DNA from: Macrostomum lignano
Taxonomy: Eukaryota
DNA length: 64,000 nt
Direction: 5' to 3'
Assembly (NCBI GenBank): GCA_002269645.1
Contig: NIVC01002700.1
Coordinates: 17,505-81,504, forward strand
The translations under genes were made by a program, and so were the position numbers. The first letter of the stretch is position 1. Each line of letters starts with the position of its first letter. Under the pieces are notes generated by a model, which was not told the DNA's origin, did no database searches, and saw nothing but the letters and a program-made list of their open reading frames with translations. Of the stretch, positions 6,180 through 14,566 are shown in pieces.

Positions 6180-6365
6180 CTACGCCGCAACTTCGCCGTT
6201 GGTTCGCTCGTCGGCGAAGGCGATCTCGCCCTCATTCTCGTCCCGATCAAGTGACGGGTTGCTGCGCAAAAAGTTGGCAATGTTACCGTAGGACAGGCTG
6301 TTGTTAGTTGAACGCTTATCAAAATCAGCGTCCAAGCCCATTCGGAAGGCGTTCACTACTCGGAT
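6180..6365 (-). CDS. ATP2B: PMCA alternative last exon Z ([15 protein letters not shown]...GEVAA*), 61 aa
   Basis: aaacAG acceptor, phase 0; IRVVNAFR is the canonical b-type CaM-domain continuation. Confidence 0.9.
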   Translation of the reverse strand: MRVVNAFRMGLDADFDKRSTNNSLSYGNIANFLRSNPSLDRDENEGEIAFADERTNGEVAA

Positions 6366-9300
6366 CTGTTTGTGAGTAGTATGAATAGATTGTTGATTTA
6401 GACGTTTTGTTCTGTGTCAAGTTTAAAGTACAGAAATGGTTCATTTCTCTGACAACATGCGAAATGGACTGCTTACACATTTGTTAACTTTTTGTGTAAA
6501 AAATTACACTTTAACAACAGATAGAATAGAATCTAGGAGGATCTGGTAGGAGGTTTTGCACTAGAACGTGGATGCACGCACAGTCTAAGGTGGAACTGGA
6601 ACGGAGGCATACCAAACTGGCATATGGTGAGAATATTTATTTTTAAACAATTTTTTTTACGAGTCAAAATCAGTTTACACAACAAACTTTCATTGAAGCA
6701 TTTAGATTAAAACGCTTCATAGGATACAGTGTGGGTGTCTGTGTGTGTGTTATCAACGGGTCTTCACACTAAATTATCTACACATCGGCAGGTAATAATA
6801 ATATTTCACTGTTGCTTTAGAACGACAAGTTGCAGTAGTGCCGCTGATCATTGCGATCATTAAACAAACAAGCGAGGCGCGAAAAAACACACAAAAAAGC
6901 TGGCGTGACGACGAATGAACATTTTTTTGTTTGTTTGCTTTCGCAAGCTGCGGTGCGGCAACAGTCTCCGTGTATGCAAGGGATTATTGCTTAATACCTG
7001 AAAATTTTGCCGCCTGCAGAAGACAATCGATAAGCAGAGGTTGTCAGGCGAATCGCGACCAATTAGAACGACCGGATTGACTTCTTTGTGTTGTAGCGAT
7101 TATTTTTTATTCTTTTTTAGTTTCATGGGGTCTCTTCTTTCTATTTGATGTGACGACCAGCGTAGTGAAGAGTTGCTTTTTTGTTATTCAGCAATATGTT
7201 TCTTTTTGACAAACACAATACTATAAAACAGTTATTACAACATTGCATTTACTGTTTGAAGCCAACTAAAGCTAGATTTACAGTACTGTGGATGTCATAC
7301 GTGTACACATAGTAATGTAACAGTATGTCATTTTTGCGTATTCTATTCAATAAGCCCGAATGGAGATTTGCAAGGACAAACAATTCAAAACCAGAAACAG
7401 ATTTTTTGCTCGAGACTTGATTCATTTCTCATCATCTACTAATAGGGTAGAAAGAGAAGTATATGTAGCTGATGAGCTGAATTATAGTCTAAACTGGTTA
7501 TTTTCTTTCCTGAGCAAATGTCTTTACATAAATACTCGTAGCTCAAGAGTTCCCTAAATTCAAAGTTTTAGTTTGTTTTTAAGCGGACAAACTTGCGAAA
7601 GTTTTTCATGTGTCCGTTTAAGAAGAGAGTGTAATAAGAATTTTTTTTGCCCTAGAGATTGGCGGTCAAGACTAGTTGACGAAGACGGTGAACCGGTTCT
7701 AACCTCAGTTTAACTGCTTCCTTTCGAATTAGCAACACCTTGCATAGTTCTCCATTCGGGCAAAAACCTGCTGCTCTCTGCTTTAATCTTCAGATTATTT
7801 ATCATTCAAAGCCTGCGTCGAGGCGGACGGCGACGAAGAAGCTGTGGTTGTCATGGTAGCCGGACCAACAGGGCTATTCATAGCTCGACAAGCGACCAGA
7901 GGCATATTTTCTATCGGACGAAGACTCGATTGTTGAGATGACGAAGAGATTCCTTCAATTAATTTATTGTTAGGAGAATCCGCATTCTCTACAGCTGGTA
8001 TACACGAACTGGCTGGTCCATAGAAAGCTTTGGGATGCGTGTTGGAGCGCTGGCTGGGATTCGTCAGACGGCGTCTGCGCAGTTCAATGATTAACTCCTG
8101 CTGCTGGTCATCGAGTCCGTCTACGGTGCTCTTGAAGGCGCGGACTACGCGCAGCTGGATGGATACGTTTGTTTGAGATTTGTCTGTCTGTTTTCTTGTA
8201 TTTTAAAAAATCAAAATCATGCTTGAAATGTCTGTGTGATCCATGAGATTTCATGTACTCATTAATCTGAGTATGTGATCCATGAGATTTCATGTACTCA
8301 TGAATCTTAGTATGATCCATGAGATTTTATGCACTCAAATCTGAGTATATGATCCATGAGATTTTATACACTCAAATCTGAGTATGTGATCCATGAGATT
8401 TTATGTACTCAGAAATCTGAGTATATAATCCATGAGATTCCATGTACTCATAAATCTCAGTATGATCCATGAGATTTCATGTACTCATAAATATCAGTAT
8501 GATCAATGAGATTTCATGTACTCATAAATCTGAGTATATGATCCATGAGATTTCATGTACTCATAAATCTGAGTATATGATCCATGAGATTTCATGTACT
8601 CATAAATCTGAGTATATGATCCATGAGATTTCATGTACTCATAAATCTGAGTATGTGATCCATGAGATTTCATGTACTCATAAATCTGAGTATATGATCC
8701 ATGAGATTTCATGTACTCATAAATCTGAGTATGTGATCCATGAGATTTCATGTACTCATAAATCTGAGTATGTGATCCATGAGATTTCATGTACTCATAA
8801 ATCTGAGTATATGATCCATGAGATTTCATGTACTCATAAATCTGAGTATGTGATCCATGAGATTTCATGTACTCATAAATCTGAGTATGTGATCCATGAG
8901 ATTTCATGTACTCATAAATCTGAGTATGTGATCCATGAGATTTCATGTACTCATAAATCTGAGTATATGATCCATGAGATTTCATGTACTCATAAATCTG
9001 AGTATGTGATCCATGAGATTTCATGTACTCATAAATCTGAGTATGTGATCCATGAGATTTCATGTACTCATAAATCTGAGTATGATTATAAAAAGTAAAG
9101 AGTTGTGAATTCTGGTTAAAGTCCGTAAAAGACAAGTTTAAAACTTCACATCCGTATTGACTTCGCATGCACTCACATCTTTGATTGAATTCTAAACAGA
9201 AAAAAAAGTATTAGAAACCGTAAAATATTGAAACATCCAGTTCAGTTAATGCAGAATAATTTCTTATCAATTTTTATCAAAGCAATTTCATCTAGAACAG

Positions 9301-13900: not shown

Positions 13901-14566
13901 TCGGCACACTGATAACCAGCTGGAGGGTGGGATGGGGGCACCGCTGGGATTATGGTGGCATTCTGGGATTCGAAACTTCTCAAGCTCGAGTCTTCTCAAG
14001 CTCGAAACTTCTCAAGCTCGAGTCTTCTCAAGCTCGAATCTTCTCAAGCTCGAAACTTCTCAAGCTCGAGTCTTCTCAAGCTCGAATCTTCTCAAGCTCG
14101 AAACCTCTCAAGCTCGAGTCTTCTCAAGCTCGAATCTTCTCAAGCTCGAAACCTCTCAAGCTCGAATCTTCTCAAGCTCGAATCTTCTCAAGCTCGAGTC
14201 TTTTCAAGGTCGAGTTTTCTCAAGCTTGAAAGTTCTCAAGCTCGAAAATTTACAAGCTCGAAGTTTCACCTTGGCCGAAAAGTTTTAAATAGGTCAATGA
14301 TTCGCAATTTTGATAGTAATAAAATTTTAGAGTTTGCGAAAAAGATTTTACTACTCTGGGTAAGTAAAAAACGCTCACCTGATGCCAAACAAGCGACCCG
14401 GCGCCGAAGCAGAGGCACCATAGCCAGTGGCTGAGGTCCAGGCCTCTGGTGCGGAACACCATGCCACCAACTTGCACGATTATCACCTGCGATGGGGGAG
14501 TGCAGTTTGGTGTGTCTGTCTGTCTGCCAGTCTGTCTTTCTGTGTCTGTTCGTGTGTGTCTGTCTG

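What the first reader, a model, noticed from the sequence alone, without database searches (positions are those of the whole stretch)
6180..13919. PMCA with at least three alternative last exons that swap the second half of the calmodulin-binding/autoinhibitory domain
Seen: the exon ending [15 protein letters not shown] (donor at 13728, phase 0) can join three separate downstream terminal exons, each with its own acceptor and stop: X (11366-11115) SLSFSAFHK..., Y (8154-7795) LRVVRAFKS..., Z (6365-6180) IRVVNAFRM.... All place AF at positions 6-7. Established: vertebrate PMCAs are split at this same site C and vary by cassette inclusion, altering CaM affinity. Inference: here one gene makes pumps with different CaM regulation through alternative last exons/polyadenylation. 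From memory, insect PMCA has a similar LRV.RAFKS / IRVVNAFR pair, which would make this a deeply conserved protostome switch. None ends in the vertebrate ETSL-type PDZ motif.
Basis: partly seen in the sequence, partly recalled or inferred. Interest (0 to 1): 0.72.

Follow-up and report, generated by a model that had tools for sequence, protein, structure and literature searches.

The report
Flatworm calcium pump with alternative tails
The 3' end of a flatworm (Macrostomum lignano) plasma-membrane calcium pump gene carries two anciently conserved alternative last exons, plus a probable third, that swap the second half of its calmodulin-binding switch; this arrangement is already known in insects, molluscs and vertebrates, so it is a new example rather than a new kind of thing.

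Summary
On the minus strand, exon U (13919-13728) ends ...[15 protein letters not shown] at a phase-0 CAG|GTAAGT donor. Three AG-preceded, stop-terminated ORFs in the matching frame follow: X at 11366-11115, Y at 8154-7795 and Z at 6365-6180.

The gene is the PMCA of Macrostomum lignano; UniProt models A0A1I8I9W2 and A0A1I8GWH9 carry only the U+Z tail.

- **Z** is the canonical tail.
- **Y** starts with [10 protein letters not shown], the signature of a second tail type. I found that type as a separate terminal exon, in the same order U-Y-Z and with the intron at the same codon boundary, in a beetle locus and a bivalve locus.
- **X** has no detectable homologue. Its codon usage matches real exons, it is the top candidate in a blind scan, and it has the best acceptor. 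I rate it a probable lineage-specific third exon.

No transcript data for this species could be reached, so actual splicing and polyadenylation remain inferred.

The deep conservation is already published. PMC9741552 dates the ATP2B/fly PMCA duplicated-exon event to the bilaterian ancestor. This is a new member of a known kind, and interest is modest.

The parts
13920..40657 (-). Upstream part of the PMCA gene. The start codon is at 40657 (MANEASV...), followed by about 12 coding exons up to TM10 (...SLVWHQ, donor near 14379).
   Evidence: The ORF list shows the PMCA exons. tblastn of Macrostomum lignano A0A1I8I9W2 (P0003) matches most aligned exons at 100% (a few at 86-98%), and A0A1I8GWH9 (P0001) matches at about 57-100% per aligned piece. 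Exon boundaries are approximate except for the last three, which were read.
13728..13919 (-). Exon U, the constitutive exon. It encodes the acidic linker and the first half of the calmodulin-binding/autoinhibitory domain (...[17 protein letters not shown]). It ends in phase 0 at donor CAG|GTAAGT.
   Evidence: PF12424 positions 1-15 score 24.7 bits. It aligns to human PMCA1, PMCA2 and PMCA4.
13874..13874 (-). Alternative in-frame acceptor inside U (ctggAG|ATCGGC), 45 nt downstream of 13919. The UniProt models use it (WHQ|IGGSTEEE).
   Evidence: The human alignment supports the longer form, [15 protein letters not shown] against IISTIPTSRLKFLKE.
11115..11366 (-). Exon X, a candidate proximal alternative last exon (83 codons plus TAG): [14 protein letters not shown]...RRMTIS...RRNSAERV.
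   Evidence: - Searches give the sequence.
- It has the best polypyrimidine tract of the three acceptors, 16 of 20.
- Codon usage is 0.61 bits per codon, with the required frame the best of the six frames; 0 of 150 control ORFs reach it.
- It is first in the blind scan.
- It ranks third of 924 ORFs against the Y-type profile, through [11 protein letters not shown].
- It is unique in the window.
- No homologue was found and there is no Pfam hit on X alone.
10599..10604 (-). First AATAAA downstream of the X stop, 511 nt away and beyond the (ACAG)63 microsatellite at 10720-10973.
   Evidence: Its use is inferred only.
7795..8154 (-). Exon Y, an alternative last exon (119 codons plus TAA): [16 protein letters not shown]... 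It belongs to the conserved 'LRVxRAFKST' tail type.
   Evidence: - Searches give the sequence.
- U+Y scores 43.9 bits on PF12424.
- The Y-type profile gives E 1.9e-5.
- Over the first 18 residues, BLAST identity is 61% to the bivalve exon and 56% to the beetle exon; the first 10 residues ([10 protein letters not shown]) are 10 of 10 with the bivalve and 9 of 10 with the beetle.
- The open frame has P 0.007.
- Codon usage is coding-like only in the first 40 codons.
7782..7787 (-). ATTAAA 8 nt after the Y stop. The next AATAAA is at 7111-7106.
   Evidence: Its use is inferred only.
6180..6365 (-). Exon Z, the distal canonical last exon (61 codons plus TAG): [19 protein letters not shown]...
   Evidence: - Searches give the sequence.
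- It is present in both UniProt M. lignano models.
- U+Z scores 56.5 bits on PF12424.
- It is 84% identical over 19 aa to the bivalve Z-type exon.
- Codon usage is 0.78 bits per codon.
6154..6159 (-). AATAAA 21 nt after the Z stop, the likely gene end.

Best explanation
This is the 3' end of the plasma-membrane Ca2+-ATPase (PMCA, P-type IIB) gene of the free-living flatworm Macrostomum lignano.

The calmodulin-binding/autoinhibitory helix is split by a phase-0 intron after ...[11 protein letters not shown]. The constitutive exon U supplies the Trp anchor half. The second half, carrying Phe at position 18, and everything C-terminal to it come from one of several downstream terminal exons, each with its own acceptor and stop codon.

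- **Y and Z** are the flatworm copies of an ancient pair of duplicated exons. The same pair lies in the same order and at the same codon boundary in arthropod and mollusc PMCA genes.
- **X** is most likely a third, lineage-specific terminal exon.

Which acceptor pairs with the single U donor, in competition with cleavage/polyadenylation after X and Y, sets the tail. By analogy with vertebrate site-C variants, the tail sets the strength of autoinhibition, the affinity and kinetics of calmodulin activation, and tail-borne phosphorylation or targeting signals.

**Shown:** the sequence anatomy, the homology of Y and Z, the conserved exon order, and the coding-like composition of X.

**Inferred:** actual alternative use in this animal, polyadenylation sites, and functional differences.
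For: **Identity**
- PF12424 and human PMCA1/2/4 alignments identify the domain.
- The top hits are M. lignano PMCAs, with most exons 100% identical.

**Split position**
- The same codon boundary, followed by GTAAG or GTAGT, occurs in beetle, schistosome, bivalve and leech loci.
- Vertebrate isoforms diverge at the same residue.

**Y and Z homology and order**
- Beetle locus L001: U ends at 19159 (GT at 19160), the Y-type terminal exon starts at 25503 and the Z-type terminal exon at 38850. Annotated isoforms P0013 and P0023 come from this one gene.
- Bivalve locus L003: U ends at 25476, the Y-type exon is at 28502 and Z-type exons are at 29878 and 38344.
- Y ranks first of 924 ORFs against the Y-type profile.
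- Y's open frame is improbable by chance.

**X**
- Codon usage matches real exons, and the required frame is the best of six.
- It tops the blind scan.
- It has the strongest acceptor.
- It sits in a GC island within AT-rich intron.
- It shows a weak STLxxxEERR echo of the Y type.

**Terminal character**
- X and Y each carry an in-frame stop, with no GTRAGW donor inside them or within about 0.5-0.7 kb after their stops. Poly(A) hexamers lie downstream.

**Anchors**
- W1, L5, L8 and F18 are kept in all three. V14 is kept in Y and Z and is Ser in X.

**Literature**
- Vertebrate site C changes calmodulin affinity and autoinhibition (PMC8835232).
- The duplicated-exon event is assigned to the bilaterian ancestor (PMC9741552).
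Against: - No transcript, EST or protein with a U-X or U-Y junction from this species could be found. Both public M. lignano models carry only Z.
- An exhaustive search with X+Y gave no true hit. This mainly shows how little Macrostomum data the libraries hold.
- X adds only 2.6 bits to the Pfam match and has no Pfam hit alone. Its profile match is E 0.84. Its open frame is unremarkable for its GC content, P 0.18.
- Beyond its first 17 residues, Y has lost the conserved RRSxHSLHS...SDISYIDED motifs of the arthropod and mollusc Y type. Its distal 79 codons show no codon bias.
- A schistosome locus and a leech locus show only one tail exon, so the pair can be lost.
Confidence: 0.72

Rival explanations
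1. Y and Z are real alternative last exons. X is not part of the PMCA mRNA. It would be a chance GC-rich open frame, or an exon of some other unannotated transcript nested in the intron.
For: - X has no homologue anywhere and no Pfam signal alone.
- Its open frame is expected 18% of the time at its composition.
- AF at positions 6-7 is only a two-residue coincidence.
- X lies between a 21-nt minisatellite and an (ACAG)n microsatellite.
Against: - Codon usage equals that of U and Z and exceeds all 150 control ORFs.
- The coding frame picked by codon usage is the one dictated by the U donor and this acceptor.
- It has the best polypyrimidine tract of the three acceptors.
- It tops the blind scan.
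- It ranks third of 924 ORFs against the Y-type profile, directly after Y and Z.
- It is not a repeat.
Confidence: 0.3
2. Only Z is used. Y is a decaying relic of the ancestral duplicate and X is noise, so the gene makes a single C-terminus, as the public models say.
For: - Public gene models contain only Z.
- Y's distal part lacks codon bias and lacks the conserved downstream motifs.
- The Y and Z acceptors are weak.
- Other spiralians (schistosome, leech) show a single tail exon.
Against: - A relic would not keep a 119-codon open frame, P about 0.007.
- A relic would not keep 10 of 10 identity of [10 protein letters not shown] with the bivalve exon, placed exactly at an AG in the right phase.
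- The public models are automated and demonstrably faulty: P0003 runs past the Z stop and skips an exon.
Confidence: 0.1
3. X and/or Y are internal cassette exons, as in vertebrates. They would be included between U and Z and stop translation early, with all mRNAs ending at the Z poly(A) site. They would not be independent last exons.
For: - The vertebrate 'a' variants work this way (PMC8835232).
- The nearest canonical AATAAA after X is 511 nt away.
Against: - There is no GTRAGW donor in X or Y or in the roughly 0.5-0.7 kb after their stops.
- In the beetle, the Y-type exon is annotated as terminal; in the bivalve it is a stop-terminated, unannotated ORF.
- A stop far upstream of a last exon junction would normally trigger nonsense-mediated decay (general knowledge).
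Confidence: 0.08

Closest known systems
Arthropod PMCA alternative C-terminal exons (e.g. Henosepilachna WA026_008939; Drosophila PMCA FBgn0259214)
   Same: - The phase-0 split falls after ...WIRGLTRLQTQ.
- A Y-type terminal exon (LRVIRAFKSTLEDLEE...) lies upstream of a Z-type terminal exon ([12 protein letters not shown]...).
- More than two choices exist at this junction.
   Different: - Insects add a VIGGELQERLIPVPYSK... cassette and short ...ETEV tails not seen here.
- The beetle Z-type tail ends in ...TETAV, and other insect Z-type tails were not read to their ends.
- The flatworm Y keeps only the first ~17 residues of the type.
- X has no insect counterpart.
Bivalve (Tegillarca granosa) PMCA locus
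   Same: The order is U, then a Y-type exon, then a Z-type exon, with three tail exons in all. The Z start is 84% identical to window Z over 19 aa.
   Different: The bivalve's third exon is a second Z-like copy downstream of Z, not an X-like exon upstream of Y. The Y-type exon there is unannotated.
Vertebrate PMCA1-4 splice site C (a/b/c/d variants)
   Same: The split is at the same residue of the calmodulin-binding domain. The alternative exon re-supplies a xxVVxxF second half. The documented consequence is altered calmodulin affinity and autoinhibition.
   Different: Vertebrates insert an internal cassette exon that shifts the frame of the common last exon. Here, and in beetle and bivalve, each alternative is a self-contained exon with its own stop. 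The vertebrate b tail ends in a PDZ ligand, and none of X, Y or Z does.
Tandem duplicated exon substitution events catalogued by Martinez-Gomez et al. 2022 (PMC9741552)
   Same: The ATP2B1-4 events are dated 'Bilateria' and paired with Drosophila PMCA under 'Bilaterian ancestor'. C. elegans mca-3 is also listed as carrying such an event.
   Different: That survey did not include flatworms and does not describe a third exon of the X kind.

Membership tests
PMCA (P-type IIB plasma-membrane Ca2+-ATPase) | P-type ATPase core motifs ([19 protein letters not shown]) and cation-ATPase N/C domains | tested here: met
   Window ORFs and their near-identical UniProt models contain [19 protein letters not shown] and [18 protein letters not shown]. 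Pfam PF00122, PF00690, PF00689 and PF00702 are recorded for P0001.
PMCA (P-type IIB plasma-membrane Ca2+-ATPase) | C-terminal calmodulin-binding/autoinhibitory domain (Pfam PF12424) | tested here: met
   U+Z scores 56.5 bits, U+Y 43.9 and U+X 27.3 against a cutoff of 22.9. The region aligns to the PMCA4 C28 peptide of PDB 2kne.
Site-C type alternative C-termini of PMCA | [quoted passage not shown] | tested here: met
   The window donor is CAG|GTAAGT, with the exon ending at 13728. The same boundary occurs in beetle, schistosome, bivalve and leech loci.
Site-C type alternative C-termini of PMCA | Two or more downstream exons that each re-encode the second half of the domain ([ILM][RK]V[VI]xAF...) | tested here: met
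   Y and Z are the only AG-preceded matches in 13727..1. X keeps only F4, A6 and F7 plus basic residues, so it meets the feature only partly.
Site-C type alternative C-termini of PMCA | Alternative use demonstrated in transcripts of the same gene | not testable with these tools
   No M. lignano transcript data were reachable. The protein libraries hold only Z-type models. It is shown for the beetle gene by annotated isoforms P0013, P0023 and P0057.
Site-C type alternative C-termini of PMCA | Variants differ in calmodulin affinity or basal activity | not testable with these tools
   Only sequence features are available: the F18 anchor is kept, V14 becomes S in X, and charges differ. The vertebrate precedent is PMC8835232.
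Vertebrate-style cassette mechanism at site C | The alternative exon is internal, has its own donor, and shifts the frame of a shared last exon | tested here: not met
   X and Y end in in-frame stops. No GTRAGW donor lies inside them or within about 0.5-0.7 kb after their stops. The arrangement is of the alternative-last-exon type annotated in the beetle and suggested by the bivalve ORFs.
Conserved protostome Y-type tail (LRVxRAFKSTLEDLEExRSxHSLHS...) | N-terminal signature LRV[VI]RAF[KR]ST followed by an acidic LEDLEE stretch | tested here: met
   Y reads [16 protein letters not shown]. The profile gives E 1.9e-5.
Conserved protostome Y-type tail (LRVxRAFKSTLEDLEExRSxHSLHS...) | Downstream RRSxHSLHS / SDISYIDED motifs | tested here: not met
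   The Y alignment to the profile stops at position 16 and the rest has diverged. Oddly, X carries [11 protein letters not shown], which resembles STLEDLEEkRS.

The most novel reading that the evidence does not exclude
X is a genuine, flatworm-specific third terminal exon. It would give a pump whose calmodulin-binding helix keeps the Trp1/Phe18 anchors but replaces Val14 by Ser. Its tail carries two RRxS/T (PKA-type) sites and a C-terminal -E-R-V, making a differently regulated pump variant.

Together with the shared U-Y-Z order in flatworm, bivalve and beetle, this would mean the ancestral bilaterian PMCA already chose between self-contained alternative last exons. The vertebrate frame-shifting cassette would then be the derived state.

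A side observation fits this. The Y-type profile scores vertebrate 'b' tails (16-20 bits) higher than arthropod Z tails (4-7 bits), and scores the vertebrate 'a' tail at about 0. The usual equation 'b = canonical = Z' may therefore be wrong.
Probability: 0.4. Interest if true: 0.42.

Novelty: new member of a known kind. Interest (0 to 1): 0.3.

Why it matters
It adds a platyhelminth to the animals known to tune their plasma-membrane calcium pump by swapping the second half of the calmodulin switch. It also shows that the exon order (LRVxRAFKS-type before IRVVNAFR-type) is shared by Spiralia and Ecdysozoa.

It corrects the public M. lignano gene models, which miss Y and X, use a doubtful acceptor for U, and in one case run past the stop codon.

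M. lignano is a transgenic and RNAi-tractable regeneration model. Exon-specific knock-down of pump tails would be feasible there. The general principle is already established, so the gain is incremental.

Tried and rejected
**Searches that found nothing useful**
- A homology search with U+Z (125 aa) found nothing, although identical UniProt proteins exist. The later profile search returned only short proteins, so the word index seems to favour targets of similar length. Negative results from short queries carry no weight.
- Exact look-ups of the M. lignano models and of a Drosophila erecta isoform were not on record. The paralogous locus could not be fetched, so no dN/dS test of X or Y was possible.
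- An exhaustive phmmer search of X+Y against 1.84 billion representatives gave one spurious repeat protein.
- Literature searches on Drosophila, C. elegans and invertebrate site C gave little. The exception was PMC9741552.

**Ideas tested and dropped**
- *A fourth tail exon:* no further AG-preceded [ILMV][RKQ]V[VI]x[AT]F start and no PDZ-like ...E[TS]x[VLI]* ending turned up. No other ORF of at least 20 codons is coding-like.
- *X, Y or Z as repeat or transposon copies:* each is unique in the window.
- *Donors that would make X or Y cassette exons:* none found.
- *A Y-type exon in the schistosome and leech loci:* none found.
- *Orthology of the vertebrate 'a' exon with the Y type:* the profile does not support it.
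Full report
**1. Observation**

- Exon U (13919-13728) translates to [23 protein letters not shown]...[18 protein letters not shown]. It ends in phase 0 at a consensus donor CAG|GTAAGT.
- Three ORFs follow. Each starts immediately after an AG and each runs to its own stop in the frame set by that donor.
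  - X, 11366-11115: SLSFSAFHK...SAERV, TAG.
  - Y, 8154-7795: LRVVRAFKS...ALNDK, TAA.
  - Z, 6365-6180: IRVVNAFRM...GEVAA, TAG.
- All three have Ala-Phe at positions 6-7, and none has an ETSL-like end.

**2. What the gene is**

- U plus any tail matches Pfam PF12424 (PMCA C-terminal domain) and aligns to human PMCA1 (6a69), PMCA2 (9gsd) and the PMCA4 C28 calmodulin-binding peptide (2kne).
- A 640-aa query covering TM5 to the tails returned two Macrostomum lignano UniProt proteins as best hits.
- tblastn shows that A0A1I8I9W2 is essentially this very gene, with most exons 100% identical. A0A1I8GWH9 is a close second copy.
- The organism is a macrostomid flatworm.
- The gene runs from an ATG at 40657 to a poly(A) signal at 6159-6154.
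- Both public models carry only the Z tail, and both are imperfect.
  - Both join TM10 (A0A1I8GWH9) or an earlier exon (A0A1I8I9W2) to an internal acceptor at 13874. That drops 15 residues which align well to human IISTIPTSRLKFLKE.
  - A0A1I8I9W2 skips an exon and reads on past the Z stop into unrelated ORFs at 4925-4752 and 1567-1325.

**3. Are Y and Z real and related to known tails?**

Among the 120 best homologues, the residues after ...LQTQ fall into recurrent classes:

- a 'Y type', LRV[VI]RAFKSTLEDLEExRSxHSLHS..., in many arthropods;
- a 'Z type', IRVVNAFR[QM]GLDxRY..., in arthropods, a tick and molluscs;
- a VIGGELQERLIPVPYSK... cassette followed by the Z type;
- short ...ETEV tails in Drosophila erecta X7, Calliphora X9 and Nicrophorus X6.

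One beetle gene (Henosepilachna WA026_008939) yields Y-type, Z-type and cassette isoforms.

I fetched that locus. The U-equivalent exon ends at 19159 (GT at 19160). The Y-type terminal exon starts at 25503, the cassette lies near 28038 and the Z-type terminal exon starts at 38850.

In the bivalve Tegillarca granosa the U-equivalent ends at 25476. An unannotated Y-type exon ([35 protein letters not shown]..., 125 codons) starts at 28502. The annotated Z-type exon starts at 29878, and a second Z-like exon at 38344.

The order U-Y-Z and the position of the split are therefore shared by a flatworm, a mollusc and an insect.

- The first 10 residues of window Y are identical to the bivalve exon. A profile of Y-type tails ranks Y first among all 924 six-frame ORFs of the window (E 1.9e-5).
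- The first 19 residues of window Z are 84% identical to the bivalve Z exon.
- Y's 119-codon open frame has a probability of about 0.007 under its own composition, which argues against a dead relic.
- Beyond residue ~17, however, Y has diverged completely from the arthropod and mollusc type. Only its first 40 codons show the gene's codon bias.
- A Schistosoma bovis locus and a Helobdella locus show only one tail exon, so the pair is not universal in Spiralia.

**4. Is X real?**

By similarity, X is not established.

- X alone hits nothing in Pfam and adds only 2.6 bits to U's PF12424 score.
- An exhaustive search of X+Y against 1.84 billion representative proteins found only a spurious repeat protein.

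By intrinsic signals, X is as good as a bona fide exon.

- Codon-usage log-odds, trained on other exons of this window, is 0.61 bits per codon, against 0.66 for U and 0.78 for Z.
- The frame demanded by the U donor is the best of the six frames.
- None of 150 control ORFs reaches its score.
- A blind scan of every AG-preceded ORF of at least 20 codons downstream of U puts X first at 50.7 bits. Z scores 47.3 and everything else 12.3 or less.
- Its acceptor has the best polypyrimidine tract of the three, 16 of 20.
- It is a GC island (0.60) in AT-rich intron and is not a repeat.
- Against the Y-type profile, X ranks third of 924 ORFs, directly after Y and Z. The match is [11 protein letters not shown] against STLEDLEEkRS. 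This is suggestive, not significant.

I rate X a probable (about 0.55-0.6) lineage-specific third terminal exon.

**5. Terminal exons or cassettes?**

- X and Y each end in an in-frame stop. No GTRAGW donor occurs within them or in the roughly 0.5-0.7 kb after their stops.
- Poly(A) hexamers lie 511 nt after the X stop and 8 and 684 nt after the Y stop. For Z the hexamer is 21 nt after the stop.
- The beetle Y-type exon is annotated as terminal; the bivalve Y-type exon is a stop-terminated, unannotated ORF.
- The likeliest architecture is therefore alternative last exons. The vertebrate frame-shifting cassette described in PMC8835232 is less likely.

**6. Mechanism**

The following is inferred. 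A single donor at 13728 pairs with one of three acceptors. Using the proximal X or Y acceptor must be coupled to cleavage downstream of that exon. Skipping both gives the Z form.

- All variants keep Trp1, Leu5, Leu8 and Phe18 of the calmodulin-binding helix.
- Y and Z keep Val14. X has Ser14 with Phe15.
- The net charge of the first 10 tail residues is +3 for Y, +2 for Z and +1 for X.
- X carries RRMT and RRNS, and Y carries RRRLT. These are PKA-type consensus sites, recognised by motif only.

In vertebrates the corresponding swap alters calmodulin affinity and the strength of autoinhibition (PMC8835232). The same consequence is expected here but was not tested.

**7. Novelty**

- It is not new. 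Martinez-Gomez et al. 2022 (PMC9741552) list the ATP2B1-4 duplicated-exon substitution events as 'Bilateria'. They place Drosophila PMCA under 'Bilaterian ancestor' in Table S5, and they mention C. elegans mca-3.
- RefSeq and UniProt already annotate the insect isoforms.
- What is new is the flatworm instance, which is unannotated, the shared exon order across three phyla, and the candidate exon X.

Verdict: new member of a known kind, with modest interest.

**8. Limits**

- No transcript evidence for this species was reachable with these tools.
- The paralogous locus could not be fetched, so no substitution-pattern test of X or Y was possible.
- Short-query searches in the word-indexed library are unreliable.

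Noticed in passing
window 53600-59600, minus strand: The gene upstream of PMCA is an angiotensin-converting-enzyme-like peptidase M2. It has HHEMGH, and its exon ORFs hit PF01401 with E down to 1.4e-90.
   Followed up: partly
window 13874 versus 13919, minus strand: Exon U has two in-frame acceptors 45 nt apart. The public M. lignano models use the inner one (WHQ|IGGSTEEE). The outer one restores 15 residues that align to human IISTIPTSRLKFLKE. This is either a possible alternative 3' splice site or an annotation error.
   Followed up: partly
window 13727-13716, minus strand: Reading through the U donor gives ...LQTQVSD*, a stop after 3 codons. [quoted passage not shown] Many unnamed database proteins from other animals show conserved read-through tails at this junction (VCLIQLHNQTVAK...).
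   Followed up: no
window 4752-4925 and 1325-1567, minus strand: UniProt model A0A1I8I9W2 continues past the Z stop codon into these ORFs and also skips the TM10 exon. It is a chimeric or mis-predicted gene model.
   Followed up: yes
window 8235-9084, 10720-10973, 11496-12575, 13970-14262, 14513-14817: Long tandem arrays flank the alternative exons.
- A 39-nt array (x22) ends about 80 nt upstream of the Y acceptor.
- A 21-nt array (x50) ends about 130 nt upstream of the X acceptor.
- An (ACAG)63 array lies in the presumed X 3' UTR.
- A 16-nt array and a (TGTC)n array lie in the two introns before U.
Whether they affect splice choice is unknown.
   Followed up: no
window 968-2116, plus strand: A 382-aa ORF begins with a charged coiled-coil-like segment and runs into a 16-aa tandem repeat (MSGCQDVWVSGCLGVR)n. 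It has no Pfam hit. Its antisense frames score high in the codon-usage test, so it is probably a real convergent neighbour gene.
   Followed up: partly
window 29324-31380 and 38076-40417: Two tandem-repeat blocks of about 2 kb each lie inside PMCA introns and give very long spurious ORFs in all frames.
   Followed up: no
L003 (Tegillarca granosa) 28502-28876 and 38344-38559: The bivalve PMCA locus has an unannotated Y-type terminal exon. It also has a second Z-like exon that is currently called as a separate 74-aa gene. The mollusc gene is therefore also under-annotated at this junction.
   Followed up: partly
protein hits P0065-P0120 versus P0023, P0055 and others: The arthropod/mollusc Y-type profile scores vertebrate 'b' tails ([27 protein letters not shown], 14-20 bits) above arthropod Z tails (4-7 bits). 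It scores the vertebrate 'a' tail at about 0. Which protostome exon is orthologous to vertebrate a and b is therefore not obvious.
   Followed up: partly
window ~26708-26887 and 27470-27769, minus strand: In the site-A region (the loop between TM2 and TM3), the models include a tiny exon encoding ...GEQKTP... between the exons at about 27.5 kb and 22.5 kb. I did not examine possible alternative splicing there.
   Followed up: no
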